This document shows, piece by piece, positions 9,129 through 28,344 of a DNA stretch of 51,871 nucleotides (position 1 is its first letter; the number at the start of each line of letters is the position of its first letter). Origin of the DNA: Octopus bimaculoides. Taxonomy: Eukaryota. Position numbers and translations under genes: made by a program. Below the pieces are notes generated by a model that did not search any database, was not told where the DNA came from, and was given only the letters and a program-made list of their open reading frames with translations. The DNA lies in NCBI RefSeq assembly GCF_001194135.2, contig NC_068996.1, positions 49,672,827 through 49,724,697 of the forward strand. Reading direction: 5' to 3'.

Positions 9129-9800
9129 CTTGTACATTGGGTGTGATGTTTAAAGGGTCAGATGATGTGGCATGCAAAGGTATGTGGCTTCTAGGAATCT
9201 TATTTGTATGCACTGTTTGAAGATGACCTCTGTGGTCATCATTATGGACATTTGAATTGCTCCTAGTAGCACCAACTTTTGCAAAGTTACCAAGCATTTG
9301 CATATGAGGATCTGAAGAGCTGCTTTCTAAATTCAGTCCAGCAGTTAATTGTTCAGATGCTAGTTTATCATTCCAGCCATTTAAATGATTGGTGCTTCCA
9401 ATATTCATGTGTTGCTGTACTGGTAGTGGTGGTGGTGGTGGTGGTGGTGGAAGAACTTCTTCTGCACCAACTCTGTTTGTGTATGTATTAGGTAGAGCTT
9501 GGAAATTTTGCCTATTCTGAGAAATACTGTGCGCAAACCGTTCCTCAAGAAAACTCAACCAATCTCGAAACTGGAACCGTTCGTCACTGGTAATGGCAGG
9601 ATGTATGAGAGAGAAAGATAGCAACTGACGACTTTCTTCAATGTGCACTCTGTTGTCAATAGAGTACGACAAAACTTGAGGAATTATTTGTAAGTAAGCC
9701 CTTTTTGCATCAGCATTTCCAGATCGAAGTAATGGTAAATGAGATAGAAGTTGCTTCACAGCCGTTTCTTTTGATTCAGAACATAACTGGCTGATGTAAT
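9129..9800 (-). CDS. SAMD4: Smaug/SAMD4 homologue, coding exon 2 (672 nt, phase 1-1)
   Basis: Pyrimidine tract and CAG acceptor at 9802-9801 joins exon 1 in frame (G+AT=D): DYISQLCSESKETAVKQLLSHLPLLRSGNADAKRAYLQIIPQVLSYSIDNRVHIEESRQLLSFSLIHPA, matching SAMD4A [21 protein letters not shown]...HIEESRQLLSYALIHPA. Later LNGW and HIPLHATSS motifs also match. Donor CAAG/GTAAGT at 9128. Confidence 0.95.
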
Positions 9801-10027
9801 CTGAAAAACAGAAAAAACAAAACGGTAAAGAACAAGTTACTGATGTGGTGGGCTACATGAAAATTAAAATGGAGTTATTGCTAGAACAGCCAGGCCAAAA
9901 AGGGCCCATAGAAGAATATCTCAAAAGTTAGGAATATCTTAATGAAAGCTAAAGAAATAAGGATCAAGATGGACACCATGAGGTTTCTGGTGATACCCTT
10001 AACTGTTTTCTTCCATCCATACTTCAA

Positions 10028-10246
10028 CCCTTTTGATACCAAATGTGCTGAGGCTGCCCTTGGTCTTTAGATACAGGCTTCATGTTTTTCAAGTAACACA
10101 TGCTAAAATCTTCCTGAAATTTCATGTTAATTCATCTCTCAAATACCAGCTTAATAACAACAAAATCGTTTTACTAAACTGTGTATTATTTTGAAAGTTA
10201 ATAACATCAATGGCAATGTATTTCAACAGAAATATGGTAAAAAGGA
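10028..10246. mobile_element. Reverse-oriented copy of the 24187-24408 MITE family
   Basis: cccttttgatacc...caacagaaatatggtaaaaagga-TTAA; inverse colinear with 24187-24408. Confidence 0.65.
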
Positions 10247-10493
10247 TTAATTAATATCTCACAGTTCTTCTTTTCAAACACTTTCTCTACATGACCAATT
10301 CACTTAACCAATCAACCATACACTCTTAAGCCTATTACATGATCTATTAATTCTTCAGTCTGATCTGCACATAGTGAAAAAACTTGAGCAGTGCTCCAAT
10401 CAACTTGCAAAATCCAATACCGCTCTCCAAAGTATGGAAGATCTCTTAAAAAATAAACAACAACAAACAAAAATGTTACACAGGAACAGATTT

Positions 10494-10646
10494 GGCTGTG
10501 TGGAAAGAAGCTTGCTACCCAACCACATGGTTCCGAGTTCAGTCCCACTGTGTGGCACCTTGGGCAAGTGTCTTCTACTGTAGCCCCAGGCTGACCAAAG
10601 CTTTGTCAGTGGATCTGGTAGATGGAAACTGAAAGAAGACTGCCAA

Positions 10647-10692
<46 letters not shown>

Positions 10693-11095
10693 TTTTGTAC
10701 TTGTCTCCCAACACTGTTTAATAACTGGTGTTGATTTCTTTATGTCTCCATAACTTAGCAGTTTGGCAAGAAAGAGCAATAGAATAAGCACCAGGATTAC
10801 AAAAAAAAATTTAAAAAAAGCACTGGGGTCAATTCATTTGATTGAAAACCCCTTCAGGGGGCTGTCCCAGCATAGCCACAGTCCAATGACTGAAACAAGT
10901 AAAAGATAAAAGATATACTGGGATTGATTTGTTCAACTAAAACCCTTCAAGGTGGTGCCCCAGCATAGCCACAGTTCAATGACTGAAACAAGTAAAAGAT
11001 AAAAGATATACTGGGATTGATTTGTTCAACTAAAACCCTTTAAGGTGGTGCTCCAGCATGGCCACAGTCCAATGACTGAAACAAGTAAAAGATAA
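10494..11095 (+). mobile_element. SINE family A with triplicated 93-bp 3' tail
   Basis: tgaaacaagtaaaagat recurs at 10891, 10984, 11077. Confidence 0.85.
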
Positions 11096-12334
11096 GCGGG
11101 TGTGTCTGTAACAGAGCCACAACTAAATCTTCAAACTTCAGGTTCAGAAACAACTTCAAATATGGTCAGCACATGATGCAATGTAAGAGCCAAGGACACC
11201 AAAGAGTTTTTGCTCACATAGCTGAGGCACAACAGTTGTTTGAACTCAATGCTCTACGATACCTCCAAATAGAGGCTATTCAGCTGGTAAAGTAAGCCTT
11301 TACCAGCTGTATCCTGACGTACCATGTTATTAGTCTCTTTTACAATTACTAAAAAAAGGCTCTTATCCTTCTGAACTTAAAATCTGTACTAAAAATAGCT
11401 TAATTCAATCACCCAATCTGATAGCTTTGGAACTCACCCTAACTGCAATCCTTTACAACTCATTCACCATTTACTACTCATATTTCCTCCCTATAGACAT
11501 TGACCTAAAAAAGTTCAAGCTAAGCACCAATAGCATCAACTGGGAGCTCTTTCGGGGGGTCATTTGGTCTGCTAGAACTAGCAGCCAAATCTGCCTTCAA
11601 TTACACCCTAATGACTTAAAAACCACATTATTCATTGTGGATTCCTTGCCAGGAAAACCCTTGTTCATATGTTTGCTTGATCAGAGTTGATCTGAGGCTA
11701 AACAACACCCACCTCACCAGTCTGAGAAGGCAAGCAAAAGTTAAGACCACTGTTGCCCTCCTCCTGGGCCAAATGTAGTTGAAAACAAAATGCAAATTAT
11801 GAATATTTAACAGAATGGCACTAACTGTAATATCTCGTCTCAAAGAATCTGCTAAAAGAAAAACTCGTGGGCTAAGAAACACAGAGCTTGCACAGTGTTG
11901 TTGGCCTATTTTTAGTTAAGAGTGTTTTGAGTTCATTTAGCTTAATCAGTGAAGAGCCCCACCCCCGGACATTCTGAAAGCCTAAAAAAATAAAATAAAA
12001 AAACCTTTGTTCTAATATAGAAATGATTTGTATATACATTATGTTACACACAATTATTTAAATCTAAAGCTGTTTCAATGCATATATATTGATTTAATAT
12101 TCTAGCTTGACCGGCTTTTGCACAAATTAGCAAACATTTTGTTTACTAATTTCTATATCAGAACAAATAATTTTTTTGCTCAACTCAGAATGTTCTGGGC
12201 CTTTATCACTGAGGAGACCAAATGAGATTGAAACACCACCAACATTCTGAGCAACTGTTTTTTTTTTTTTTTAAATAAATAAAAGTTTTAAAAGTTTCTG
12301 AGACATAGCGTTACAGCTAGTGCCATTCTGCATT

Positions 12335-12373
<39 letters not shown>

Positions 12374-12861
12374 CATTATATGTAATGTATATGCAAATGT
12401 AGGCTGATGAAAACTAGTAGTTTGAAACTTGAAAAGCACTGTCACTCCTCTCAAAGAAATATAATAATAAATAGATGCTCAGTAAAAAGTACTGAGCAAT
12501 CCTTCAGTTTAATGGAAATTGTTTTTATCAAAACTCAATATAACAACAAAACATCAATACATATTCATACACACACACACACTGGTTCTCTTCTGAGACA
12601 GAAATCAATTATGTTAATGGTTTGTTTATCAGCTAATTGTTTCCTTTCAATCATAAAAATACATTGATGCCAACACTACATCTCAATTACCTCGACCTGC
12701 AAGTGTCACCATTATGCACTTTGTTTGCTGATATTCAATTTTTTAGTTCGTTATGATATGTGGTTTACACCTGAAGAATATGCTTCAGTTCTCTCAAAAT
12801 GTTAATATTAGTAGCGCTTTAATACATGTATTGTGACCTTTAAATAATAATTATATATATA

Positions 12862-13295
12862 GGTGTAGGAGTGGCTGTGCAGTAAGTAGCCTGCTTACCA
12901 ACCACATGGCTCCGGGTTCAGTCCCACTGCGTGGCACCTTGTCAAGTGTCTTCTGCTATAGCCTCGGGCCGACCAAAGCCTTGTGAGTGGATTTGGTAGA
13001 TGGAAACTGAAAGAAGCCCGTCGTATATATGTATGTATATATATATGTATGTATATATATATGTATGTATGTGTGTGTATATATGTTTGTGTGTCTGTGT
13101 TTGTCCTTCCACCATTGCTTGAGAACCGATGCTGGTGTGTTAACGTCCTTGTAACTTAGCGGTTCGACAAAAGAGACCAATAGAATAAGTACTAGGCTTC
13201 CAAAGAATAAGTCCTGGGGCCAGTTTTCTCAACAAAAGGCGGTGCTCCAGCATGTTCACAGTCAAATGACTGAAACAAGTAAAAGAGTAAAAGAG
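12862..13295 (+). mobile_element. SINE family A, full length
   Basis: Same head, core and tail as 2982-3385. Confidence 0.9.
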
Positions 13296-13484
13296 TATNN
13301 NNNNNNNNNNNNNNNNNNNNNNNNNNNNNNNNNNNNNNNNNNNNNNNNNNNNNNNNNNNNNNNNNNNNNNNNNNNNNNNNNNNNNNNNNNNNNNNNNNNN
13401 NNNNNATAGGTAAAGCAAATTTTAGAGGTAATACTTGATAATTGCAAGCACCTGTATATGCCAGATAGTGGCCGGGGTGAAAGA

Positions 13485-13588
13485 ATAAATTCAAAACGTA
13501 AAATTAAAACAAAACACAAAGGATTCTGCGGTACACGTGTACCGCGGAATCCTTTGTGTTCTGTTTTAATTTTACGTTTTGAATTTAT
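13485..13588. repeat. 104-bp loopless palindrome
   Basis: Axis between 13536/13537 (ACAC|GTGT); 52-bp arms with 2 mismatches. Confidence 0.95.
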
Positions 13589-13739
13589 ATATATATATTA
13601 GTCATTTAGTCATATAGAAGTCAAAGACTAAGAATTTAACAGGATGTTTTCCTCCCTGAGAATCACTGAAACTAGTAACAGTCCAACTCTATTTAAAGTA
13701 AAAGATTTCCTTTTTTCTCAATATCTGCTGGGTCTGGAA

Positions 13740-13990
13740 GAAAGGGCAGTGCCAACAGCCCTTTCACAGATACTTCTTGGCTGGTGAGATTGATGCTATT
13801 AATGTTCCTCTTGAACCTTTACAATTCAACATGCATGAAAGACTCAAAATACACAAACAGGGATGGAATTCCAGGACGAAAAAGCTGAGTATAGTAATTA
13901 GTACAGGGATTGAGGCAGGTGGGGGAAGGATGTTGATGGAAACATGATGAGAGGAGAAGAGACTTGTAGGTCAGGAATGTCTGAGAGGCA
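13740..13990 (-). mobile_element. CR1/L2/Jockey-like LINE 3' remnant
   Basis: Across frameshifts reads PCTNYYTQLF...FESFMHVEL.RFKRNINSINL, resembling RTN.Y..SF...WNSLP...FKR; heavily decayed. Confidence 0.4.
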
Positions 13991-14329
13991 GTGTCATCAA
14001 TCCAGTTAGTGGCTCCGAGAAGCAGAGGCTATTACAATAGCACAAAAAAAAAAAGCAAAGATAGAGAGAGAGGGGAGCTACAGAATAAAAATCACCTGCC
14101 AACAAACAAATATATCTTCTCAATTTCAAAAGTGATTTAGAAAATGATTTGTTGATTCATGGTCGTGTTTTAGTATGGAGATGGGTGAGTTTATCAGCAG
14201 AATTTTGTCTTACACAGTCAGCATTAGTTCAGGCAGATGCATGCCTGTATGTTTTCCCTTCGGAAATTCAAGCCTGCCATCATAGCTTTACAACAGAGAC
14301 TAGTGAAGAAAATTAAATTCAGCAATTGT

Positions 14330-14537
14330 CTCATTTAAACTGGCCATATTCAGCCCAAATATTGTTCAAACTAGCCATATCCAGCCCCTTGTACCTACCC
14401 TGTGATGTCATTCTAAAAACATAATATAACACATTACATCATCAAAATTTTAAAGCTGCAAGATAATGTATGATTAATTCAAAACAATGTGAATAAGAAT
14501 TACATTTGACAGAATAATCTTAATGCCAAATGGTTAA
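14330..14537 (+). mobile_element. Copy of the CCCTTTAGCATT MITE family
   Basis: tttaaactggccatat...tcattctaaaa...aatgccaaatgg-TTAA. Confidence 0.7.
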
Positions 14538-15687
14538 CAAATCCAAGCTATATTCTACCCATTTCAATTGACTGGCAGGAAGTTGATCACCATGACACCA
14601 TGACACTAACCTCTACATGCTAGAAATAAACTTCAACATTTAGGAAATAGTAACAAAATCTCACTTGCATTACACCCAGTCTTACACAAAAAAAAAAGAA
14701 AGATGGACAGGGTAACAAGGACTACATTATCCGTAGTGTCTGGAAAAAGAATCTCAGGACTGGGGTCATGGTTGGAATGCCTATGATCATAGGTCATCTG
14801 GATAAGTAAGAGAAAGAGCAATAGGATGGATTGGTGTCTGTCTATCTATCTATATATATATATATATATATNNNNNNNNNNNNNNNNNNNNNNNNNNNNN
14901 NNNNNNNNNNNNNNNNNNNNNNNNNNNNNNNNNNNNNNNNNNNNNNNNNNNNNNNNNNNNNNNNNNNNNNNATATATATATATATATATATACAGCTAGT
15001 TATTTTACAACCCTAAAGCAACAATTGAAAGCAAAGTGAATAGGAATCAAACACCTAACCAAGAAGATCAATCAAAACTAATTAATGTAAGGCTATTTAG
15101 TGCAGTCAGGTTTAATGAAGTAAAGCTTAATGCTAAGGAATTATAAGGGGAAAAATTCTCTCTTCTTAGACATGGCTGTGTGGTTAAGTTCTTTCACAAT
15201 TTGTCTCAGGTCCAGTTGCACTCTGCAGCATCTAAGTAATCAAAACCTTATGAGGGAATTTGGCAGATGGAAACTGCAGGAAGCCTGTTGTATATGGATG
15301 TGAACTCACACACAAACATGCAAAAATGTTCATATTTCATGTTTGTCACTTGGAGCAAAGCAGTGAGTTGAACTCATTGTTTATATTAAAACTGGTCAGT
15401 CTGCTCTTTCAAACACCTATGGAATAAAGAAATTCCTTTACTTGAAAAAACAGGTAAGGTTTGGCAACAGGAAGAGCATCCAGCCCTAAAATCCTGCCTT
15501 GAGTAACTTGAGCCTACACCCATACTAGCATGGGGGGGGGGGGGGAATAACCCTTTAGAATTCAGATTATTCTGTCAAATGTAATGTTTATTTATTCACA
15601 TTGTTTTCAATTAATGAAGCTTCATATCACAGCTTCAAGATTTCAATGATCTGATTGTTTACTTTTAGAATGAGAATGCAGGTTAGA

Positions 15688-16025
15688 TCATCATCATCAT
15701 CATCATCATACAAAGCTCATTTTCCATGTTAGCATGGGTTGGACAGTTTGACAAGAGTTGGCAAACCAGAAGACTGCAGCAGGCTTCAATGTCTGTTTTG
15801 ACATGGTTTTTTCTTATGGCTGGATGCCCTTGCTAGCACCATACACCTTACATAATGGACAATGTTTTTTTTTACGTAACACCAGCACTGGAGGTCTGTT
15901 TTGGCATGGTTTCTACAGCTGGATGCCCTTCCATATACCAACTACTATACAGTGTAGACTGGATGCTTGTTTTTTTTTACATGGCACCAGCATTGGCAGG
16001 GTCACCAAGTAACTTGCAAAACAAA
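15688..16025 (-). mobile_element. Family C copy
   Basis: (CAT)n then ttccatgttagcatgggttggacag; duplicated ttttggcatggtttctacagctggatgccc. Confidence 0.7.
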
Positions 16026-16469
16026 GATGTAAGAGGCTAAATCTGGACAGTTTCAACCTAAAACAGGTAGAATATTTGAGCAGGATATGGCCACCTTAAA
16101 TGCTAAATGCTTAAACAAATGAACAAACAGAACTAGATAAACAATGGCAGGCTGCCTTTTTATCAATACGATTTCAAGGAGTGGAAACTATTTCCATGTT
16201 TAATCAGAAAAAGTGTAAACATTTGAGGTTTTAGAACTCACAAAAGAAAAGTACTAAAAAGGACCCCACCTTTTTTTTTTGCTTTGTTTTTTTCATACAA
16301 GCCACCTTCTTTTTAATTAATTTAATTTCTAGAGAAGAACATTTAAAACATCAATTTGATTTTTTTTCTTTTTATGGGTACTGATTAAACTGCAGTTCAT
16401 TTTAATTTCAGAAAAAAATCCTGTATAAACTAATTTTTAAATGATTATAATAAGCGATTTTAAAATCTT

Positions 16470-16750
16470 TCTTTTATCTTTTACTTGTTTCACCCATTAG
16501 ACTGTGCCCATGCTGGGGTACCATCTGGAAGAATTTTTTTATTGAATGAATCGACCCCAGTACCTTTTTTAAAAAAAAATACCTGGTACCTATTCTATTG
16601 GTCTCTTTTGCTAAACCACTAAGTTACAGGGAAGTAAACAACAATTGTCAAGCAGTGGTGGGGGACAGACACACACATACGATATATATATACATACACA
16701 CACACACACACTTACATGACAGGCTTCTTTCATTTTTCTGTCTACCAAGT
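16470..16750 (-). mobile_element. SINE family A, partial
   Basis: Reverse complement of tail and body (ttttacttgtttca...ctattggtctcttttgc). Confidence 0.75.
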
Positions 16751-17117
16751 TTATAATTCTATTAATTCTCCAAGGAGAGTTCTTGCTAAATGCTTCTTAT
16801 AAAAGAATATTTCTTTGTAGCAGTTTCATGTGTCAAATGCATGCATGCATTCTTGTCTTTCATAAAGTCTGTTGCCATTAAGACTGCATTCAAACACAAA
16901 TTTTAATGTCTTGGGAGGTTAAAATACAATAATCTCAACTTGTTTGTTTAACTCTGAGTCAACTATGACTAAGCAACATTTTATGACCAAAAGGCATTCC
17001 AGCTTTCTTTGATCAACTCTTTTTTCATTGGCACTGAGCTTCTAGAAAATGCACACAAATGGAGCGATGGCATTATAAGGGTGGTGTTCTAAAAGCAGTA
17101 AGGAAATAAAATTCAAT

Positions 17118-17438
17118 ACTGTGTGGCACCTTGGGCAAGTGTCTTCTACTGAAGCCCCAGGCCGACCAAAGCCTTGTGAGTGGATTTAGTAGATGGAAAC
17201 CGAAAGAAGCCTGTTATAGATGTATATCTATGTGTGTGTGTGTGTGTCTGTGCTTGTCCCCCTCGCCCACCAGCGTTGGTGTGTTTATGTCCCCATAACT
17301 TAGTGGTTCGACAAAAGAGACCAATAGAATAAATACTAGGCCTAAAAAAAAGTTCTGGAGTTGATTTGTTTGACTAAGATTCTTCAAGGGGATGCTCCAG
17401 CATGACTGCAGTCAAATGAGTGAAACAAGTAAAAGAAT
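17118..17438 (+). mobile_element. SINE family A, 5'-truncated
   Basis: ctgtgtggcaccttgggcaag...tgaaacaagtaaaag. Confidence 0.85.
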
Positions 17439-17799
17439 GGGGAGGGAGCTTAACAGCAATTTTTAGCAAATTTCAAAGAGAAGGGGAGATAATTTTATAA
17501 ATTAAATTTCTCAAAATTTATTTTCATGCTTAGAGTAAAAGAGTTTGATCTTTGCAGACAAGGGACAAATGTGATACGTTTTAAAAGTCTATTTCATCTC
17601 ATCAGGATAGTGTAGCCTAACCAAGCTTGTTTAGCTAAGTTGACAAAGAATTTTTTCAGATATACAAAGAGCATTACAATGATTTTTTTTGATTAGCATA
17701 ATTTCCATGACTAAAAGAAAGAAAGAAAAAATCAAACAGGCCAATGACAAAGTCAAGGGGCAACAGGATTATTTCCATATTTATTCTTGATATATTTAT

Positions 17800-17970
17800 C
17801 AGAGTAAGCACATAAATGCGAAACAAAGTGGGGAAAAAATAGTACTCAAATACCAGAGGTAGAGTAATATGCTTTATCAAAAAGCAGCAAAAATATTACA
17901 AAAACTGTTACTCAGAGTTTCACGTTGACATTCATCAAAACTGTCTGACAAATGTGAAACTGAGTAACAC
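17800..17970. mobile_element. Decayed, reverse-oriented copy of the double-hammerhead foldback element
   Basis: Reverse complement of the unique tail (gtactcaaataccagaggtagagtaatatgc) followed by aaaactgttactcagagtttcacg and a truncated second arm. Confidence 0.7.
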
Positions 17971-17984
17971 TTCTTAATAAATAA

Positions 17985-18015
<31 letters not shown>

Positions 18016-18017
18016 GG

Positions 18018-18708
18018 CAGATTCAGAGTCAAATATGCTGCTCGCTGTTGTGTACATTACAAGAGAATAACTCTTCTCTTTTATGATGGCAATGTGTTCA
18101 TAACATACTAGGCTCATAGGCACACAAAATTCTGGGACACCAGTGTTTCAACATGTGTCTCATCAGCCAGAAGTAGCAGCAGATCTAATCCAAGACAAAG
18201 TTACTGGCTTTGTTTAGACTTTCAGCAAACAAATTGTTTGCTCAGTGACGCTTTATTATCTGCCAACCTATAAAAAATATTTATTTGCACTGTGTACAGC
18301 AAGATCTGGAACAATTATTCACATGTTTATTCTTAACATGTCCGGCAGATTCAAACACAAAATATGCTGGTCACTGTAGTGTGTGTCACAGGAGAATAAC
18401 CCCTCTCACTTTTATAACAACAGTATGTTCCACACACTTGGTTCATTCAAGCACAACATTCTGAGACACTAGTGTTTTGGCATAGGGTTAGTCAGCTGGA
18501 AGCAGCACCCTTACTTTTGAGCCTAAACAAGACTCTGGCTTTGTTTATAATTTCAGTGAACAAGCTGTTTACTGACCAGTGCTGATACATGCTAACTATA
18601 AAAAAAAATTTTAAATAAATCATCTTTACTGTGTGCAGTGAGATCTGAAAATGATGATTAGCATATTTGCATTCAATTTGCATATTTTACATATTCTGCC
18701 TGGACATA
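18018..18708. mobile_element. Two adjacent diverged copies (~326-bp offset) of an HHR-bearing element; second copy (18337-18708) bounded by TTAA and imperfect TIRs
   Basis: ggcagattc at 18018 and 18344 with colinear homology. TTAA-catgtccggcaga...tctgcctggacata-TTAA. Second HHR (18459-18502) is decayed but keeps palindromic ACACTAGTGT-C. Confidence 0.65.
18130..18172 (-). ncRNA. Minimal type I hammerhead ribozyme, sense to Smaug intron 1
   Basis: UUCUGG-CUGAUGA-GAC ACAU GUU-GAA-ACAC UG GUGU-C^CCAGAA: perfect 6-bp stem I, canonical core, 3-bp stem II (G.U closing), 4-bp stem III, GUC site; predicted cut 18136/18135. Confidence 0.85.
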
Positions 18709-18712
18709 TTAA

Positions 18713-18915
18713 CCCATTAAGTTCCACTGTCCTATAAATAGGACACTAAATGAGAATATTAAATAAGCTATATCACATTGTCTCAGTGTCCTATTTATAG
18801 GACACCGAGTATTTCCATTTCTACTTGAAGTAAAGGAGTTTTAATAATTATTTTTTTTCATTTTAACCTATTTTCAATCCTCTGTAAAAATTTAAGTACT
18901 CTGGGACTTAATGGG
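18713..18915. mobile_element. piggyBac-like MITE
   Basis: TTAA at both flanks; TIR CCCATTAAGT(T/C)CCA; internal inverted tgtcctataaataggaca motifs. Confidence 0.8.
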
Positions 18916-19299
18916 TTAAGAATAAATAAGCAAGCAATCATTTCAGATCTTATTGTACATGGTGAAAATATTTTTTTTTTAATATTGAATATCAGTCACA
19001 AGAAATTCTGAACTGAAATTTACTAAAAGAGAATCTAAAATGACATTTTCCGATATATCCTTTTAACCCTTGCTAGCACTGACAACAGACATTAGATGAT
19101 GATGTAATTTGAGGGCAATTTCGCTGCCATTTTAGCAAGTCAGATGACCACAAGAAAGCCTTTCTAATTGATTCAATGATTCCAGAATTGCTTAGAATCA
19201 TACATAAAACTTGAAATATAACCATCTTACAGTATGGATAGTAAGATGCACTGCAAATTAAATAATTTATGGGACATGAATAATCTTTCTTTCTTTTTT

Positions 19300-19660
19300 C
19301 TTTACTTTTTTTCAGTTGTTGGACTGAAGCTATACTGGGACACTATCTTGAACTCCAGTACTAATTTCAAGCCTGGTACTTATTCTATCATTCTTTCTGG
19401 CCAAACTGCTAAGTTATGGAGAAGTAAACATCAATACTGATTGTCAAGCAGTGGTGGAGGGACAAACAGATACAAAGACACCTATACATTTATTTATATA
19501 TATGTATAGGCTTCCATACAGCTTTGGTCTACCTAATTTACTCACAAGGCATTGATTGGCCCTGGGCTATGGTAAAATATACTTGCCCAAGATGCTGTGT
19601 AGCAGGGCTGAACCAGAAACCATCTGGTTGCAAAATGAGCTTTTCAACCAAACCATTTGC
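19300..19660 (-). mobile_element. SINE family A, diverged
   Basis: Reverse-complement tail at 19300 through head region (aaccagaaaccatctggttg) at ~19620. Confidence 0.7.
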
Positions 19661-19863
19661 CTATTCCACTCCCCACCACCACCACCACCACCACCACCAA
19701 TGCTGAAAAACATTGAACATGTGTTACCACCTGGCAGACATGTAGCCTTCTTCTCCACTTCCATCTTTTTTAGGTTTTAAACCCTTTTTGTTGTATTTCT
19801 GTAGAATCACACTAACTTTGTTTCAGTTACTTTTTGAAAGTAAATTTTAAGAACTATCATTAA

Positions 19864-20218
19864 GGTGCAGGAGTGGCTGTGTAGTAAGTAGCTTGCTTAC
19901 CAACCACATGGTTCCAGGTTCAGTCCCACTGTGTGGCACCTTGGGTGTCTTCTACTATAGCCTCGGGCTGACCAAAACCTTGAGTGGATTTGGTAAACAG
20001 AAACTGAAAGAAGCCCGTCATATGTGTGTGTGTGTGCGTGTGTGTTTGTCCCCCTACCATCGCTTGACAACCGATGTTGGTGTGTTTACATCCCTATAAC
20101 TTAGCGGTTCAGCAAAAGCAACCGCTAGAACAAGTACCAGGCTTACAGAGAATAAGTCCTGGGGTTGATTTGTTCAACTAAAGGTGGTGCTCTAGCGTGG
20201 CCTCAGTCAAATGACAAA
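19864..20218 (+). mobile_element. SINE family A
   Basis: Head ggtgcaggagtggctgtgtagtaagtagc to tail. Confidence 0.88.
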
Positions 20219-20238
20219 CATATTTTAAAAAAAAAAAA

Positions 20239-20455
20239 GGCAGTGATCTGGCAGAATCGTTAGCATTCTGGGCGAAATGCTGAGCAGTATTTCGTCCGTT
20301 TTTACATTCTGAGTTCAAATTTCACCGTGGTCAATTTTGCCTTTTATCCTTTCAAGGTAGATAAAATAAGTACCAGTTGAGTACTGGGTTGATGTAATTG
20401 ACTATCCCCCTCCCCCAAATTTCAGGCCTTGTGCGTATAGCAGAAAGGATTATTA
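20239..20455 (+). mobile_element. tRNA-derived SINE family B (Meta-domain-like core, tentative)
   Basis: A-box tggcagaatcg, B-box gagttcaaatt, core gcctttcatcctttc..gtcgataaaataagtaccag. Confidence 0.75.
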
Positions 20456-20494
20456 AACTGGTGTTAGAAACAAATTAACATGACATTTTCTATA

Positions 20495-20915
20495 GGCGTA
20501 GGAGTGGCTGTGTGGTAAGTAGTTTGCCTACCAACTACATGGTTCTGGGTTCAGTCCCACTGCGTGGTACCTTGGGAAAGTGGCTTCTACTATAGCCTCG
20601 GGCCAACCAAAGCCTTGTGTGTGGATTTGGTAGACGGAAACTGAAAGAAGCCTGTTGTATGTATGTGTGTGTGTATATATATATATATATATGTATGTGT
20701 GTATATGTTTGTGTGTGTGTCTTTGTCCCCCCAACATCACTTGACAACCGATGCTGGTGTGTTTACGTCCCCGTAACTTAGTGGTTCGGCAAAAGTGACC
20801 GATAGAATAAGTACTAGGCTTCCAAAGAATAAGTCCTGGGGTTGATTTGCTCGACTAAAGGCGGTGCTCCAGCATGACCACAGTCAAATGACTGAAACAA
20901 GTAAAAGAGTAAAAG
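20495..20915 (+). mobile_element. SINE family A, full length
   Basis: Head ggcgtaggagtggctgtgtgg to aagtaaaagagtaaaaga. Confidence 0.9.
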
Positions 20916-21394
20916 ACAGGTTTAAATTTAGATCGCTTTCAAACAGATTTTGTGTCTTAGATCCAAGGGTGGTCTTAGTCAGGTTTGTATCAAGAGGGTT
21001 AATTCCATTACAAGTTTTCTCTCCAACATCAATACAATATAGCACCAATACACGCACGCCCATTCTCAAATTAAGTCGCATGTTCATACCATGCACAGTT
21101 ATTTCTCCTGCATACATCAGCTGTTTTTCATTCATTTGTGCTTTGTCTCTCTATCTTCTAATTAACTTTAAATGTCCAATGAATTGTACTTGCACTGATT
21201 TCTTGTTAGGCACTGCACCGTTTCTGCATTTAGTTGCCCATGTCCCCATACCGTGCAATATCATCAGCTCTGTCAACACTAAACTACAATTCTACACAAA
21301 AATACTGAATGGCCTTTTAATTTCTAATATGATAGGTTGTCAAATAATGCATTATTCAAATTAAATAACTCATTTTATCCAATTGCAATGCTGA

Positions 21395-21596
21395 AGGACT
21401 CCTGCTTGTGTAGCATGGTGCAGAGTCCTGTTGCCAGAGATAGGGTCTTCCAACAGCCACCCTCTTGACCCAGGGCAGCACTACCTCCTCTAGGCACTTG
21501 ATGTAAGCCTCTGTGTTGAATCTGAGGTTGTGTGGGAAGATGAATGGAAGCTTAACATCACCATCACAAGTAATCACTCCAAACACCATATAAGGA
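21395..21596 (-). mobile_element. Internal fragment of the same maT transposase family
   Basis: MVFGVITCDGDVKLPFIFPHNLRFNTEAYIKCLEEVVLPWVKRVAVGRPYLWQQDSAPC aligns to 37.25-37.40 kb. Confidence 0.85.
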
Positions 21597-21811
21597 ATTG
21601 TAAAGGAAGAAGCAGCGCAAGGAGAGACCCAACAACAACTTCTTCCACCACTGAGACAACAAATGCTCTCCACCCCACCCTCAGACACACCTACCCCCAC
21701 CCTCGTGCCTGTTTGCAATTGAACTTGTGGATCCCTCAAGTCACATTCGACTAAACATAGTCACAAGTTCACACAAGCGCAAATCATTCTCGAACCCGAG
21801 AGACTGCCCAC

Positions 21812-21822
<11 letters not shown>
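21597..21822. repeat. Unclassified ~225-bp interspersed repeat ending in (TA)n
   Basis: Colinear with 34227-34446. Confidence 0.8.
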
Positions 21823-21848
<26 letters not shown>

Positions 21849-22719
21849 AACATACATACAATGATCTGTACCAATCTTTGGTTATTTCTTTATTTAAATA
21901 ATGGTTTTGAAGTACAATTTTCTAGGACATCATATCCCTCCCTCAAACAATTAAATCAAAATGTCTAATTTTAATCTAAGCTATCCCTTTCATATTCCAA
22001 CAATACATCTGAATATTTTTTACATATTTTCATAGCATTTATAGTTCTTTCTTTACTCCCAGAAAAAAACAATCATAAAGTCTGATTGCAAAAAAAACGA
22101 AAAACAAAAGTTTTTCAGATATCTGTCTATAGCCACTGTGTTTATAAGCGCCCTATCTAAGTCACCTGAATAACAAAGTATGTATTTGCTCATAAGAACT
22201 ACCACAACAGACTTTAGAGCTGGTTGTGCTAAATTCTACAGTTACCTAAGCCATCTGTTGCCAAATTTCTCATATTTCTGTCTTCTCTCAGCCTCACTAA
22301 GTACGATATATATTTCACCAATACTGATTTTCAAGGCAAAACACTGGATCAATAGAATAATAAATTTATTAAAAAAAAAAAAATACTTTAAGCAATTAAT
22401 GAGAGTATTCAAAGAATCCTGTATATTATATTGAAACAACATTTTGTAATTAGAATTTAACACTTGTTCCAACGGGATTTTTTTTTTTTTTTTTTTTTTG
22501 CTAAAAGCATTAACTAATGCATCAGTAGAATAGTGGTTAAGATTGTTGCTGTTTTTAGTTTAGAAATAAACTTTACTAATCTGAATTTAGATTGGTAAAC
22601 ATATGTTAATACATAAAGTCAGTGATGATGAGTGGAGATCAAAACTTTAACAAGACATTAAATGTTTTAATCTCTTCAAATAAGGTTAATGATATAAAAA
22701 AAATTATCATCTTCATTAC

Positions 22720-23235
22720 AGGGCTCTGCTAAGCCATCAATCCACTTTGCCAGGGTCTTCTTTGTGAGGGTGTCATGTTTCTGCTCCATAGAGGAGAATG
22801 GAGAAGACCAATGCATTGTAGATGCGGAGCTTTGTCTTCTGGGAGACAGAACAATGGTGCCACCAATGCTTCCACAAAATGATGAGAAGAACATTAAATA
22901 GTACCATCATATTTCCAACCTCATAGCCATCCACAGCAAGAACTGGTACAGACACATCCTCTGCCACCTGCCAAATCATCTTATCAGAAGAGCCTTATTC
23001 TCATTTGATGCAGCAGCTGCAGGTTGGAAGAGGCCCTATGGCAGACTCCGTGCCATATAAGCTGGACATGATTAAAGAAGATCTTGATGTCATCTTGGAG
23101 GATGCTGAGTGGCTGGCACAGGACTGCCAGTGATAGGAAGCACTGGTGTACCTGGTCAGCTCTACACACAATGACGCTTCTAGGACCACTAACCTGGGAT
23201 GACCCCAAGTCCCATCAAGTAAGAGCATGAAGCAA
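22720..23235 (-). mobile_element. RTE-clade LINE 3' fragment
   Basis: SVSQKTKLRIYNALVFSILLYGAET is a typical RTE RT C-terminal motif; multiple stops. Confidence 0.7.
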
Positions 23236-23269
23236 CAGAATCTTCATTATAACTATCTCGCACATTTAA

Positions 23270-23702
23270 CCCTTTAGCATTTAACTGGTCGTGTCCAGTC
23301 CAAATAGTAACTGGTTTTATATTCAAACCAACCAAGTCTGACCAGGTCTAGCCTACCAGGAAATGTCTTTAAATTAACCTATCACACCATCAAAATCTCA
23401 AAAGCTACAGGATAGTATACAATTAATTGCAAACAATGTGAATAAACGAGCATTACATTTGATAAAGTTATCTGAATATTAAAGGGTCAATCCATTAGAA
23501 TTTAAACTGGCCATATGCTAAACATTCTATTTGTTTTATGTTCAAACTGGCCAAATCTGGCCTACCAGGCAATATATTTCTAAAACTAAACAATCACATC
23601 ATCAAAATCTCAAAGCTCTGAGATAATGCACGATTAATTCAAAACAGCATGAATAAATAAGCATTACATTTGACAAAATAATCTGGATGTTCCACAGTTA
23701 AA
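23270..23702 (+). mobile_element. Two tandem copies of the CCCTTTAGCATT MITE family
   Basis: TTAA-ccctttagcatt at 23266; second unit from ~23491; both carry atcaaaatctcaaagct and gcattacatttga. Confidence 0.75.
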
Positions 23703-24186
23703 CATTTTAGAATAAGTTTGATTGTTTTGATTTATCAAAAGAAAATATTTCTAACAAATAATAAAGTTTAGATAATCTTCACCACAAATAAAAACATCTA
23801 AGAAAATCTGCCACACCACCAAACCATTTGTTGCAATCATGCAACAAAACTATTGTCTGGATGACGAAACAGAAAGAGAAAAAATACAACTCATACTACA
23901 GTAAAAAATATCCTAAAACAATATTAAGCAGTGCTCACTAAAAATTTCATTAAAAAATTAATCATTAATCAATATTTAAATCAACATTTCTGACTATCAG
24001 AGTTAATGTCAGTTTCACATTAAAATTAATGAATTTGGATATGTTTGTATTGTGTCGAGTTAAAAACAAATCTGATATTGCAGAATGCTGACTCTTCATA
24101 TTTTTCAGTCGTTGGACTGTGGGCCATGCTGGGGCACAGCCTTGATGGGTTTTAATTAAATGAATTAACACTAGTACTTATTTTGA

Positions 24187-24408
24187 CCCTTTTGTTACCA
24201 TATTTCTGTTGAGATGCTCTGTGTTTCTTTCAATTAATTTAAATATAACAAAGAATTTAGTAAAATAACTTAGTTATCATAAAACTAGTGTTAGGAACAT
24301 AAATTTGTGACTAAGGTTTGGTGGAAGATTTTAATTCAAAACTTATGAAAACAAGACATTTGTACTACAGAGCCAGAGGTGATTTCAGCCAGGTTGGTAT
24401 TGAAAGGG
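24187..24408. mobile_element. piggyBac-like MITE (CCCTTT.GTTACC family) interrupting a SINE
   Basis: cccttttgttacc...ggtattgaaaggg-TTAA; SINE-A tail sequence continues on both sides. Confidence 0.7.
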
Positions 24409-24654
24409 TTAAAGTTTGACACTTATTCTATTAGTCACTTTTACTGAACTGTTAAGTTACAGGAATGTAAGCAAACCAACAACTGTGGTCAAGTGGTGGT
24501 GTGAGACAAGCACAGGCAGGCGCGCGCGCGCGCACGCACGCACACGCACGCACGCGAAGGGAACTGAGTTCAGAATATAAAGACCCAGAAGAAAATGATA
24601 AATCAGTTCTGATGAATCTTTACATTCTCAGCTCAAATGTGCTAACTCACTGCT

Positions 24655-24890
24655 TTAATAATCCTTTCCAGTACAGGAACAAGGCCTGAAATTTTGGGAG
24701 AGGGAATGGGGAGTGCTAGAGCCAGTGACATCAACCCGAGTGCTCAACTGGTATTCATTCCATCAACCCTGAAAGGATGAAAGGCAAAGTCAACCTCAGT
24801 GAAATTTGAGCTCAGGACATAAAGACAAACGAAATGCCACTCAGCATTTTGTCCAGCATGCTAATGGTTCCGCCCGCTTGCTGCCTTAAC
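24655..24890 (-). mobile_element. SINE family B
   Basis: aaggatgaaaggcaaagtcaacc...atttgagctcag, inverse of 20239. Confidence 0.75.
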
Positions 24891-25189
24891 TCACTGCTTT
24901 GATAATAATAATAATAATGATAATAATTGTGCCTGTAATAACTGGTGCATTGGAAACTGTAAGCAAAGATATAGACAAATGGTTGAAGGAGATTGGAATA
25001 GAATGTCCCTGTAGAGCTTCTGTAGAAAGTTTGCCACTTAAGGACAGGAAGGATTATCAGGAGGGTTCTAAGCACTTGAAAGACTATTGAAAGCTTGAGG
25101 ATACTTAAGGTTACAGGTAGTAACTGTCTACCCACAGAAACCCTACCAGGGATAAGAACAGACCAGAGTCAAATCATCAATAATAATTC

Positions 25190-25389
25190 TTTCTAATTTT
25201 TGGTACAAGGCTAGCAAATTTGGGGTAGAGGGAGAGGACTTGTCGATTACATTGACCCCAAAGTCCAACTGGTACTTATCTTAACTCCAAAAGGATGAAA
25301 AGAAAAGGATTTGACTCAAGAATGTAAAGATGATGAAAAACCACCAAGCATTTTGTCCAGTGTGCTAACAATTCTGTCAGCTCACTGCC

Positions 25390-25392
<3 letters not shown>
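25190..25392 (-). mobile_element. SINE family B
   Basis: caactggtacttat...gcattttgtccagtgtgctaacaattctgtcag. Confidence 0.7.
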
Positions 25393-25420
<28 letters not shown>

Positions 25421-25782
25421 GAGCACTTAGAGAGCGCAAACCTCCACCAGGGCAACACCAACATCCTCTCAACAATTAGCCAGAGATGATTTTTAAAATG
25501 AGAATAACTGAAATAAACTCAACTGCTCTCAAAAATGAGAATACTAATAATGAACCCGACCGATCTCAAAAATTAAGTAAAAAAAACAAAAATAATTCAG
25601 AATCGTTGCCTGGTGCCGGGTTGATCCCAAAACCTAATCAGTTTGTGCCAGTCACAAGGCCAAACATCTTGGAAGTTTCATCCAAATCCACCCAGTGGTT
25701 CTTGAGATATCTTGTCCAGGGACAAACAAACACGACTGATAACAATACCTCCGCCTTAGTGAAGGCAATAATAATTAAACAA
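25421..25782 (+). mobile_element. Helentron/DINE-1-like non-autonomous element (tentative)
   Basis: Subterminal ctcc(g/a)cc motifs near the 5' end and near the 3' end (aatacctccgccttagtgaaggc hairpin); homologous to 38930-39215. Confidence 0.5.
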
Positions 25783-26164
25783 ATAGTTACTGAAGGAGAC
25801 AGAGGCTCTTCTTGAGTTGCTAGACATGTTCTTTATCACCACACAAATCAAAATATTAGTCATAAGTGAAAGAGAAAAACTTATGGAGAAACTACAATGA
25901 AGGTGGTTGTTATTGCACCATATTTATTCTATTATTCAAGAACATACTCATAAAGATTTTTGATACTATATAGCTTGTATGACTGATGGAGGAAACTTAT
26001 CGACACCCAGGCACAATGCAAATACATAAAGAGGTGGGGTTGTTGTTGAGAGAAAGAAAATATTAGAAGGGACTGGAAAAGAGCCAGTTTAGAAAGTTTT
26101 GTAATTCATCAGGTTTTTTTTGAATTCTGATCATATGCAAACTCATTATATATAGCTTGACAGA

Positions 26165-26575
26165 TTCAACCATCTATCCATCTTCTCTACCTTCTAGAGG
26201 GGTCATGGGTGGGGAGAGTCCTCAGGTACCTCTTCCGTTGGGTCCTTTCAGAAGTAACCATCATTAGACTTTCCTGCTGGGTTTCCAAACACGAACAACT
26301 GAACTATGGATATTCTCCAACCATCTTATTCCTAGTTTATCCCCAAGTCTCCTGCCAGTTGTGGGGCTAGTCCTCTGGCACTTTCTCCATAGGGTCCTAC
26401 CAGAAACAACCATCATCACACTTTCCAGCTGGATTCCAAAACGTGACCAACTTAGACTATGGATATTATCCGACCATTTCATCCTTGGTTTACCCCAACA
26501 TCTCCTCTCAGCTGGTTTGACTTGAAGAATCCGTCTTGCAATTCTTCCCTGCAACATTCTAATCACTTGTTTGAA
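26165..26575 (-). mobile_element. RTE-clade LINE 3' fragment
   Basis: IARRILQVKPAERRCWGKPRMKWSDNI resembles the RTE C-terminus (G.R..GRP...W.D.I). Confidence 0.6.
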
Positions 26576-27111
26576 TTATCTGAGCTGTGACTTTCCAAAG
26601 TGGAGAAGTAGTGGCTTGGCCTGGAGAGACTCCCCAATCTCTGAACCACACACCCTATCCAGTAATGTTACTCCAGATATCCTTTAGAGAAATCCAATTT
26701 TGGTCACTTGTATTCATGAACATACTTTTTCAGTCATTACCCGACATTCATGAAATCAAACTAGTTCGTAACTTTTGTAATGTTAGTATATGATAGTTCA
26801 AAATTTTAATAGGAAGGCCATTCAGTCATAAAAACTCTGCCAAATACAGACACAGAAGTCTGGTGCAGGCTCTTCCCTGGCCAGTTCCTGTCAAACCATC
26901 CAACCCATGCCAGAATGGAAGGTGGACGTTGAATGATGATGAGGAGGATGATGGATTAAGAAGCATACCAAACAAAATTAAGTTTCATCACCAGAGAAAA
27001 CAGTAAAAAAAAAAAGTGAGCTAATGAAGAAGCCTCTACACAATCATTAAACCTGCTAGAAACAGCAGCTAAATCTCTCTGAAGTCACTTACCTTTTATT
27101 ATAATTTTCTT

Positions 27112-27480
27112 TTTTACTTGTTTCAGTCAATGAACAACTATGTTGGGGCACCAACATGAGTTTTGTTGAACAAATCAACCCCAGTACTTATTCTACCAAT
27201 TTCATTTGAACTGCCAAGTTATGAGGAAGTAAATAAACCAACCCATTGTCAAACAATGGAGCAGGGAAGAGAGGGAGACAAACATAAACGTGTGTGTGTG
27301 TGTGTGTGTTTGTGTGTGTGTATATATATAACATATGCACACATACAGTGAGCCTTCACACAATTTCAAACTATCAAATCCACTCACAAAGACATTGGTG
27401 AGCCCAGCGTTATAATAGGAGACACTTGCTCCAAGATGCCACACATTGGGACTGAACTGAAAACCACGTGGTTGCAAAGC
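27112..27480 (-). mobile_element. SINE family A, diverged
   Basis: Reverse complement; atccactcacaaagac...gggactgaac. Confidence 0.7.
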
Positions 27481-27599
27481 GAGACCACACACCCAGACTT
27501 GTCACTTGCAAGCACGTATTACTGCGTAGTACGTGCCATGGTTTTGCTAAATTATTTTAGGGTCCCTCTGTTAGTCTTGAGCTTTACCATTTTCTTCAG

Positions 27600-27975: not shown

Positions 27976-28027
27976 TTAAGAAAAAAAAGACAGACCAAGA
28001 AATAGAGTTTAAGAAAACTTCCAATGA

Positions 28028-28080
<53 letters not shown>

Positions 28081-28338: not shown

Positions 28339-28344
28339 TATATA

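What the first reader, a model, noticed from the sequence alone, without database searches (positions are those of the whole stretch)
18130..18172. Canonical hammerhead ribozyme in the sense strand of a Smaug intron
All conserved core nucleotides are present (C3 U4 G5 A6 G8 A9 G12 A13 A14 A15.1 U16.1 C17), with a perfect 6-bp stem I, a GUC site, and a 4-bp stem III with a 2-nt loop that is one change from the palindrome ACACCGGUGU. It lies in the transcribed orientation, so it could cut the Smaug pre-mRNA about 8.3 kb upstream of exon 2. Precedents are the intronic CPEB3 HDV-like ribozyme and amniote intronic HHRs. The tight stem III suggests weak monomer activity and a need for dimerisation; the neighbouring copy 326 nt away is core-mutated but keeps the complementary stem III.
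Basis: partly seen in the sequence, partly recalled or inferred. Interest (0 to 1): 0.82.

Follow-up and report, generated by a model that had tools for sequence, protein, structure and literature searches.

The report
Transposon-borne hammerhead motif in Smaug intron
A complete hammerhead self-cleaving RNA motif does lie in the sense strand of a Smaug intron. It sits in one unit of an old, decaying 329-base tandem repeat of the kind that carries such ribozymes in many animal genomes, so it is most likely an ordinary mobile-element relic and not a dedicated regulator of Smaug.

Summary
Minus strand 18172..18130 reads UUCUGG-CUGAUGA-GACACAUGUU-GAAA-CACUGGUGU-C-CCAGAA. All core nucleotides are present, stem I has 6 perfect pairs, the site is GUC, and helix III is a short quasi-palindrome. 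It is the only such motif in the window, against about 0.003 expected by chance. It matches Rfam Hammerhead_1 end to end, but at 28.8 bits, below the curated 34.

It lies in a 23,084-nt GT-AG intron of a Smaug homologue, in sense orientation, 8.3 kb upstream of the next coding exon.

- The motif belongs to a 329-nt head-to-tail repeat (copy A 18016-18344, copy B 18345-18685, 66% identical). An inverted partial unit lies next to it, and the array ends on a (TA)n microsatellite. This is the architecture of metazoan non-LTR retrozymes and Penelope-related repeats.
- Helix II is very weak (G•U, A-U, C-G).
- The hammerhead fold is 9 kcal/mol above the minimum free energy of the 43-mer and 14 kcal/mol above it in context.
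- In a dimer with the dead copy B, the intact A core would cut B's site (18465/18464), not 18136/18135.

I could test neither conservation nor family copy number. My verdict is a new member of a known kind, of low to moderate interest.

The parts
18130..18172 (-). Type I hammerhead motif of repeat copy A. Stem I is 18172-18167 with 18135-18130. CUGAUGA is 18166-18160. Helix II with its loop is 18159-18150. GAA is 18149-18147. Helix III (ACACUGGUGU) is 18146-18137. C17 is 18136, and the predicted scissile bond is 18136/18135.
   Evidence: Sequence. Full-length Rfam RF00163 alignment at 28.8 bits against a gathering score of 34. Unique descriptor hit with 0.003 expected per window.
18016..18344 (-). 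Repeat unit A (329 nt, 37.7% GC). It carries the intact hammerhead core, and its 3' end (…GAATCTGCC) abuts the (TA)n microsatellite.
   Evidence: Direct-repeat families D3, D4 and D14 with spacing 328-331. blastn and nhmmer self-matches. GC content.
18345..18685 (-). Repeat unit B (about 341 nt, 36.7% GC), head to tail upstream of A and 66% identical to it over 324 aligned positions.
   Evidence: Alignments. nhmmer E 3.6e-104 and 1.9e-98 for the two units (self-matches by construction).
18459..18501 (-). Decayed hammerhead homologue of unit B: TTCCAG CTGACTA ACCCTATGCC AAA ACACTAGTGT C TCAGAA. The core is broken (U7/G8 region, G12A) and helix II is lost. The perfect palindrome ACACUAGUGU and the GUC are kept, with C17 at 18465. 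This is the substrate strand that A's core would meet in a dimer-type fold.
   Evidence: Sequence. No Rfam hit even at E<=10. A x B helix III duplex -13.1 kcal/mol. Composite fold -99.3 against monomer fold -92.6 kcal/mol in the 401-nt transcript.
18693..18712 (+). Left part of an inverted (head-to-head) partial repeat unit: a unit end (attctgcc) followed by a unit start (tggacataTTAA). It is split from the rest by the MITE.
   Evidence: Read, compared with the A/B junction …gaatctgcc|ggacatgTTAAgaataaac.
18916..18986 (+). Right part of the inverted partial unit. It matches unit positions about 8-79, and similarity is lost beyond that.
   Evidence: Inverted repeats I1 and I5. blastn 74.6% over 67 nt. 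nhmmer E 3.4e-5.
18713..18915 (.). A later insertion: a 203-bp inverted-repeat element (CCCATTAAGT… / …ACTTAATGGG) flanked by duplicated TTAA (18709-18712 and 18916-18919). It interrupts the inverted partial unit, which shows that the repeat cluster is older than this insertion.
   Evidence: Sequence. Inverted repeats I13 and I15.
17977..18015 (.). (TA)n microsatellite directly at the 3' end of the array.
   Evidence: TRF period 2, 19.5 copies. Sequence.
9801..32884 (-). Host intron (23,084 nt, GT…AG) of the Smaug homologue, between the first coding exon (33077..32885) and the next (9800..9129).
   Evidence: tblastn with P0003: residues 1-64 at 81% identity and 65-282 at 55%. Splice-site sequences. 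Homologues are named Smaug homolog 2 / PHAT_SMAUG.

Best explanation
The motif is the hammerhead of a mobile-element-derived repeat. The repeat is a roughly 329-nt, AT-rich unit carrying a type I hammerhead, of the kind described as metazoan non-LTR retrozymes and related to the terminal repeats of Penelope-like elements.

Inferred history. The element inserted into the Smaug intron as a short multimer, with a head-to-head partial copy, next to a (TA)n microsatellite. It has since decayed. Copy B lost its catalytic core. A TTAA-flanked inverted-repeat element later split the inverted copy. Copy A happens to keep all core nucleotides, but its helix II is very weak.

Inferred function in the original family. 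Hammerheads of tandem units pair through the palindromic helix III, cut multimeric transcripts into monomers, and a host ligase circularises the monomers.

Predicted behaviour at this locus. Only one core survives, so no monomer can be excised. At most a slow single cut of the nascent Smaug intron is possible. That cut would fall at B's site (18465/18464) in the cis dimer-type fold, or at 18136/18135 in the much less favourable monomer fold. I expect little or no effect on Smaug expression.

What is shown and what is inferred. Shown: the motif, the repeat architecture, the decay, the gene context and the fold energies. Inferred: the family assignment, the insertion history and the low activity.
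For: - Motif and significance.
- The 329-nt tandem dimer plus an inverted partial unit.
- Unit GC of 37-38%.
- Tandem duplications with spacing of 100-600 nt cover only about 4% of the window. A chance motif landing in one is therefore unlikely, at about 1e-4 per window jointly.
- The array ends on (TA)n.
- Copy B's core is dead and undetectable.
- The hammerhead segment is as diverged (13 of 43 positions) as the whole unit (34%).
- Weak fold: the monomer hammerhead is -2.8 against an MFE of -12.1 kcal/mol with fold probability 1e-7. Helix II contributes about -0.5 kcal/mol. The intermolecular helix III is -11.8 to -13.1 kcal/mol.
- In the 401-nt context: MFE -106.7, composite A-core/B-site fold -99.3, monomer fold -92.6 kcal/mol.
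- Literature. Animal type I hammerheads lie in 150-450-bp low-GC tandem repeats, including 350-390-bp repeats in mussels and 330-bp repeats in newts and axolotl that work as dimers (PMC7229834). The usual architecture is helix I of 6 bp, helix II of 4 bp and a short palindromic helix III (PMC4209133). Penelope-like insertions often carry an adjacent inverted truncated copy and favour microsatellites (10.1101/2021.04.23.441226). In Xenopus tropicalis 43.9% of non-LTR retrozyme copies are intronic (10.64898/2026.07.22.740005). The giant squid genome annotation lists 235 Hammerhead_1 matches (PMC6962438).
Against: - I found no other family member. The window holds only this locus. The source genome was not searchable. 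A metagenome scan and a protein-space search with translated repeat frames gave nothing relevant. 'Multi-copy dispersed family' is therefore unproven.
- The unit RNA is not unusually structured (z = -1.1), unlike the highly self-paired retrozyme circles.
- The Rfam score is below threshold.
- No Penelope-type reverse transcriptase or GIY-YIG reading frame is evident nearby. This rests on an eye inspection of the stop-free fragments in 11-27 kb, not on a formal test.
- Retention of all 13 core nucleotides in a copy this old has only about a 5% neutral probability per copy. That figure is compatible with one survivor among many copies, but also with constraint.
Confidence: 0.7

Rival explanations
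1. An exapted intronic ribozyme. The element-derived hammerhead, alone or paired with copy B, cuts nascent Smaug pre-mRNA before the downstream exon is spliced. This lowers Smaug mRNA output in the way proposed for the CPEB3 HDV-like ribozyme.
For: - Sense orientation in a 23-kb intron, 8.3 kb upstream of the next exon. That leaves minutes of transcription time for a slow ribozyme (timing is inference).
- All core nucleotides are intact although the unit is old. The neutral probability of this is about 5% per copy.
- A's stem I 5' strand (UUCUGG) can pair with B's 3' strand (UCAGAA), and the two helix III palindromes give a 10-bp duplex of -13.1 kcal/mol.
- Precedent: inhibiting the CPEB3 ribozyme raises CPEB3 expression (PMC10274809, listed).
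Against: - There is no evidence of conservation. The hammerhead segment diverges between the copies as fast as the rest of the unit.
- Helix II is nearly absent, and the hammerhead folds lie 7-14 kcal/mol above the MFE.
- The Rfam score is below threshold.
- Intronic retrozyme copies are commonplace.
Confidence: 0.1
2. A chance hammerhead look-alike inside an unrelated local tandem duplication. On this view the ancestral unit never encoded a ribozyme.
For: - At genome scale, about 0.003 chance hits per 52 kb amounts to more than a hundred sites in a genome of gigabase size.
- The Rfam score is below the gathering score.
- Copy B's resemblance to a hammerhead is no greater than its 70% identity to A would give.
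- Helix II is poor, and no other family members were found.
Against: - The motif coincides with a 329-nt AT-rich tandem unit, the typical carrier of animal type I hammerheads. Such duplications cover only about 4% of the window.
- The helix III decamer is a perfect palindrome in copy B and a G•U variant in copy A. This is a specific feature of dimer-type hammerheads.
- The helix I and helix III architecture matches the metazoan consensus.
Confidence: 0.12
3. A currently active retrozyme locus that produces about 329-nt linear and circular RNAs from the intron.
For: Unit size, tandem arrangement and a type I hammerhead, as in the mussel and axolotl retrozymes.
Against: - Excising a monomer needs two working sites. 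Copy B's core is dead, and the array has only two units that are 34% diverged.
- The unit fold is unremarkable (z = -1.1).
Confidence: 0.03

Closest known systems
Metazoan non-LTR retrozymes (Cervera & de la Peña 2020, PMC7229834), for example the Mytilus galloprovincialis 350-390-bp repeats
   Same: [quoted passage not shown] A mollusc host. No loop-loop tertiary motif is evident, as in the mussel ribozymes. Intronic copies are common.
   Different: Only two units plus a fragment are present here. The units are 34% diverged and one ribozyme is dead. Family copy number and RNA circles were not shown. The unit RNA is not strongly self-paired (z = -1.1).
Newt satellite 2 and axolotl HHR_Amex1/2 repeats (330-350 bp), the classical dimer-dependent hammerheads
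   Same: Nearly the same unit length (329 against 330-350 nt). A short helix III with a palindromic loop that favours a double-hammerhead. HHR_Amex2 also has a weakened base of helix II.
   Different: There is no sequence relationship. Helix III here has 3-4 bp, not 1-2. Helix II here is weaker still: G•U, A-U, C-G with a 4-nt loop.
Minimal hammerheads in the terminal repeats of Penelope-like elements (PMC4209133; Craig et al. 2021)
   Same: A tandem repeat with an adjacent inverted truncated copy and a junction with a microsatellite. A hammerhead expected to work as a dimer and only poorly in vitro.
   Different: No RT/GIY-YIG reading frame lies between or beside the repeats. Penelope minimal hammerheads have a long helix II (7-8 bp) and a short helix I (4-5 bp), the opposite of this motif.
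Amniote intronic hammerheads (Rfam HH9/HH10) and the CPEB3 HDV-like ribozyme
   Same: A self-cleaving motif in the sense strand of an intron of a protein-coding gene. The same conceivable consequence: a cut in the nascent pre-mRNA.
   Different: Those are single-copy and conserved across orders. Here the HH9 model scores 20.8 bits against a gathering score of 52, the motif is part of a repeat, and conservation is untested.

Membership tests
Hammerhead ribozyme, type I (Rfam RF00163) | Conserved core C3 U4 G5 A6 N7 G8 A9 / G12 A13 A14 / A15.1-U16.1 / H17 | tested here: met
   All are present in 18166-18160, 18149-18146 and 18137-18136.
Hammerhead ribozyme, type I (Rfam RF00163) | Three helices around the core, with helix I open and helices II and III capped | tested here: inconclusive
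   Helix I has 6 perfect pairs. Helix III has 3 bp plus a CUGG loop, or 10 bp as a dimer. Helix II has only G•U, A-U and C-G (about -0.5 kcal/mol). The hammerhead fold is -2.8 against an MFE of -12.1 kcal/mol.
Hammerhead ribozyme, type I (Rfam RF00163) | Score at or above the curated gathering threshold (34 bits) | tested here: not met
   28.8 bits. No hit at the gathering threshold.
Hammerhead ribozyme, type I (Rfam RF00163) | Site-specific self-cleavage that gives 2',3'-cyclic phosphate and 5'-OH ends | not testable with these tools
   This needs an in vitro transcription and cleavage assay.
Metazoan non-LTR retrozyme | Head-to-tail repeats of about 150-450 bp, each with a type I hammerhead | tested here: inconclusive
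   Two units of 329 and 341 nt lie in tandem. Only unit A has an intact motif, and unit B's is decayed.
Metazoan non-LTR retrozyme | Low GC (<50%); no LTR, primer-binding site or polypurine tract | tested here: met
   GC is 37.7% and 36.7%. The units are directly adjacent with no internal region.
Metazoan non-LTR retrozyme | A multi-copy family dispersed in the genome | not testable with these tools
   The source genome is not available. Only this locus is in the window. External searches were empty.
Metazoan non-LTR retrozyme | Expressed as highly self-paired linear and circular RNAs of unit length | tested here: inconclusive
   Predicted unit fold is -86.3 kcal/mol with z = -1.1 against shuffles. 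Expression is not testable here.
Penelope-like element terminal repeat (pLTR) | Direct repeats that flank an RT plus GIY-YIG reading frame | tested here: not met
   Units A and B abut each other with no intervening sequence. The stop-free fragments within 11-27 kb show LINE-like and mariner-like remnants only, by eye.
Penelope-like element terminal repeat (pLTR) | Minimal hammerhead with a long helix II (7-8 bp) and a short helix I (4-5 bp) | tested here: not met
   Helix II has 3-4 bp and helix I has 6 bp. The feature definition is from PMC4209133.
Amniote intronic hammerhead HH9 (RF02275) | Score at or above the gathering threshold (52 bits) | tested here: not met
   20.8 bits.
Conserved gene-regulatory intronic ribozyme (CPEB3-type) | Conservation at the orthologous intron position across species | not testable with these tools
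   The orthologous contigs retrieved cover only window 8928-10089 (L003 and L004, 85-87% nt identity). A distant 12.8-kb contig (L005) has no hammerhead and no repeat.

The most novel reading that the evidence does not exclude
The two-unit array has been co-opted as a split ribozyme. The surviving core of copy A uses the catalytically dead copy B, 329 nt upstream in the same nascent transcript, as its substrate strand. The pairing runs through the 10-bp palindromic helix III and the UUCUGG/UCAGAA stem I. This cuts Smaug pre-mRNA at 18465/18464 and tunes the output of a translational repressor in octopods.
Probability: 0.04. Interest if true: 0.7.

Novelty: new member of a known kind. Interest (0 to 1): 0.28.

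Why it matters
If the ordinary reading is right, this is one more decaying retrozyme-type hammerhead in an invertebrate intron. It is useful mainly for annotation, and as a reminder that an intact core is not evidence of function.

It would matter only under two conditions. The orthologous intron of other octopods would have to keep the motif under constraint, and the RNA would have to cleave. In that case it would be an invertebrate counterpart of the CPEB3 and amniote intronic ribozymes, acting on a post-transcriptional regulator of neuronal and maternal mRNAs. It would also be a natural case of an active core using a dead neighbouring copy as its substrate.

Tried and rejected
- Whole-window Rfam scan at gathering thresholds: nothing. 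The motif appears only in E-value mode. Copy B is undetectable.
- TRF did not report the 329-nt array because the units are too diverged. It was recovered with the repeat finder, blastn and nhmmer.
- Metagenome scan with the block shared by A and B (AAACACTRGTGTCYCAGAAT): two hits, both inside a bacterial coding gene, which are chance matches.
- Search of protein space with a concatenation of the stop-free translations of the repeat, hoping for spurious ORFs called on other family copies: 965 word candidates, none with E<=1.
- Orthologous intron. Smaug exon homologues led only to 1.1-1.3-kb Logan contigs (85-87% nt identity, covering window 8928-10089) and to one distant 12.8-kb ENA contig without a hammerhead or the repeat.
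Pfam on six long ORFs returned nothing, including for the Smaug exon, so I put no weight on that negative.
- A miRNA-like reading of the hairpin at 18728-18804 is rejected. mir-4922 scores 32 bits against a gathering score of 82, and the hairpin is the core of the TTAA-flanked inverted-repeat element.
- A monomeric 4-bp helix III with a 2-nt loop is rejected as sterically impossible in the nearest-neighbour model.

Full report
**The observation**

On the minus strand, 18172..18130 reads UUCUGG CUGAUGA GACACAUGUU GAA ACACUGGUGU C CCAGAA. Every conserved hammerhead core position is present: C3-A9, G12-A14, the A15.1-U16.1 pair and C17. Stem I has six Watson-Crick pairs. The scissile bond would lie between 18136 and 18135.

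A type I descriptor that I wrote finds this site and no other on either strand of the window. In 300 dinucleotide-preserving shuffles of the window, the 5/3/3-bp version found 0.003 hits per window and the 6/3/3 version found none. That is below the curated gathering score of 34, so the whole-window scan at gathering thresholds reports nothing. The amniote intronic model HH9 reaches only 20.8 bits against a gathering score of 52. The motif is therefore real and better than chance for a window of this size, but it is a sub-threshold example.

**Gene context**

The ORF at 9118-9759 on the minus strand has homologues named 'protein Smaug homolog 2', and these carry PF26034 (PHAT_SMAUG). A tblastn search with homologue P0003 places residues 1-64 at 33077..32886 (81% identity) and residues 65-282 at 9801..9127. 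The splice sites are canonical: CCAG|GTATGT at the donor and TTTTTCAG|ATTAC at the acceptor. The intron is therefore 32884..9801, or 23,084 nt.

The motif lies inside a unit of about 329 nt that occurs head to tail twice. Copy A is 18016-18344 and copy B is 18345-18685. The two copies are only 66% identical over 324 aligned positions, with 72 transitions and 38 transversions. The Jukes-Cantor distance is 0.45.

At the position homologous to the hammerhead, copy B reads UUCCAG CUGACUA ACCCUAUGCC AAA ACACUAGUGU C UCAGAA. Its core is broken, helix II is gone, and Rfam finds nothing there even at E<=10. It does keep GUC and a perfect palindrome, ACACUAGUGU. The offset between the copies is 329 nt, not 326.

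Further features of the array:
- Upstream of copy B, on the opposite strand, lies a partial third unit (18693-18712 plus 18916-18986). It contains a unit end followed by the first 80 nt or so of the next unit, head to head with B.
- That partial unit is split at a TTAA by a 203-bp inverted-repeat element (18713-18915) flanked by duplicated TTAA. The repeat cluster is therefore older than that insertion.
- The 3' end of the array (…GAATCTGCC) abuts a (TA)n microsatellite.
- The units are 37-38% GC.
- Tandem duplications with a spacing of 100-600 nt cover only about 4% of the window. A chance hammerhead look-alike would rarely fall in one.

**Comparison with the literature**

- Cervera and de la Peña report that most type I hammerheads of animal genomes lie in low-GC tandem repeats of 150-450 bp, which they call non-LTR retrozymes. 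Examples include 350-390-bp repeats in the mussel and 330-350-bp repeats in newts and axolotl. The short helix III of the amphibian ribozymes makes them work as dimers (PMC7229834).
- The typical metazoan architecture is helix I of 6 bp, helix II of 4 bp, and a short helix III capped by a small palindromic loop (PMC4209133).
- Penelope-like elements carry hammerheads in their terminal repeats. They often have an adjacent inverted truncated copy and favour microsatellites.
- A 2026 preprint derives animal retrozymes from those terminal repeats. It finds that 43.9% of the copies in Xenopus tropicalis are intronic.
- The giant squid genome annotation lists 235 Hammerhead_1 matches and also Penelope elements.

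The locus fits this known class in unit length, composition, arrangement and ribozyme type. It does not fit a Penelope terminal repeat proper. No reading frame lies between or beside the units, and the helix proportions are the reverse of the Penelope 'minimal' hammerheads.

**Would it cleave?**

Nearest-neighbour energies argue for weak activity.
- Helix II consists of G10.1•U11.1, A-U and C-G with a 4-nt loop, worth about -0.5 kcal/mol.
- The monomeric hammerhead fold is -2.8 kcal/mol. The minimum free energy structure is -12.1 kcal/mol, and in it GACAC pairs with GUGUC. The hammerhead fold has an ensemble probability of 1e-7.
- In a 126-nt context the minimum free energy structure is again not a hammerhead, and its stability is unremarkable (z = +0.27).
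- The helix III decamer does form a 10-bp intermolecular duplex.

The strand topology of a double hammerhead matters here. Each active site combines the enzyme strand of one unit (stem I 5' strand, CUGAUGA, helix II, GAAA, helix III 5' strand) with the substrate strand of the other unit (helix III 3' strand, C17, stem I 3' strand). In an A-B pair, the live core of A would therefore face B's GUC at 18465/18464. A's UUCUGG can pair with B's UCAGAA using one G•U. A's own site, 18136/18135, would face B's dead core.

In the 401-nt transcript that covers both units, the energies are:
- MFE: -106.7 kcal/mol
- composite fold (A core with B site): -99.3 kcal/mol
- monomeric hammerhead fold of A: -92.6 kcal/mol

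The composite fold is thus 6.7 kcal/mol better than the monomer fold but still 7.4 kcal/mol above the MFE. With only one live core, no unit-length RNA can be excised, so no circle is expected. The unit RNA itself is not unusually structured (z = -1.1).

**Selection**

The hammerhead segment differs between A and B at 13 of 43 positions (30%), against 34% for the whole unit. Under neutral decay at half the A-B distance, one copy keeps all 13 core nucleotides with a probability of about 5%. That is unremarkable if the family has many copies. It is mildly suggestive if this is the only one. I could not decide between these.

The source genome is not in any searchable collection. The searches I tried were these:
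- A metagenome scan with the block shared by A and B gave only chance hits in a bacterial gene.
- A protein-space search with translations of the repeat gave nothing.
- Contigs carrying the orthologous exon from a related octopod are 85-87% identical in nucleotides but cover only window 8928-10089.
- A more distant 12.8-kb contig has neither the hammerhead nor the repeat.

**Verdict**

The best explanation, at about 0.7, is a relic of a retrozyme-type or Penelope-related repeat. One of its hammerheads keeps an intact core by survival rather than by selection, has at most slow activity, and has no dedicated role in Smaug expression.

The rivals are:
- an exapted intronic ribozyme (about 0.1);
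- a chance look-alike in an unrelated duplication (about 0.12);
- an active circle-producing retrozyme (about 0.03).

The finding is a new member of a known kind. The decisive work is a copy census with a family consensus in octopod genomes, an alignment of the orthologous intron, and cleavage assays that map both candidate sites.

Noticed in passing
window 18713-18915 (TTAA at 18709-18712 and 18916-18919): A 203-bp element with terminal inverted repeats CCCATTAAGT…/…ACTTAATGGG, flanked by duplicated TTAA. It looks like a piggyBac-type MITE. Its centre holds a perfect 20-nt inverted repeat (18728-18747 / 18785-18804), which gives sub-threshold miRNA-like Rfam hits (mir-4922 at 32 bits against a gathering score of 82).
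   Followed up: partly
window 4271-4731: A tandem repeat with a 165-nt period and 84% identity between copies, in the next intron downstream. No Rfam family matches it at gathering thresholds.
   Followed up: no
window 36894-37705 (+) and 21356-21760 (-): Two degenerate ORFs that share motifs such as 'QQDSAPCYTSR' and 'FIFPH.LR.N.EAYIKCLE'. By eye they look like remnants of a Tc1/mariner-type transposase. Pfam returned no hit.
   Followed up: partly
window 22776-22994 (-) and 26267-26575 (-): Stop-free fragments with motifs that look like the C-terminus of a LINE reverse transcriptase ('KTKLRIYNALVFSILLYGAET', 'GKPRMKWSDNI'). This was recognised by eye only.
   Followed up: no
window 16582-16645, 17282-17347 (inverted), 19365-19435; similar translated fragments near 13140, 20531-20854 and 39590-39904: A short interspersed repeat (CCTGGTACCTATTCTATTGG…AAGTTAC…) recurs many times in both orientations, usually next to (TG)n/(CA)n runs. 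It is probably an abundant SINE of the host genome.
   Followed up: no
window about 560-760, 6700-6850, 13300-13420: Runs of N totalling 1,250 bases. These are assembly gaps, so the intron lengths given are those of the assembly.
   Followed up: no
L003/L004 (Logan SRR11869391 and SRR11869394): Contigs from another sample carry the same Smaug exon at 94% protein identity and 85-87% nucleotide identity, including about 300 nt of flanking intron. A closely related species therefore exists in public read sets and could be used for the orthologous-intron test.
   Followed up: partly
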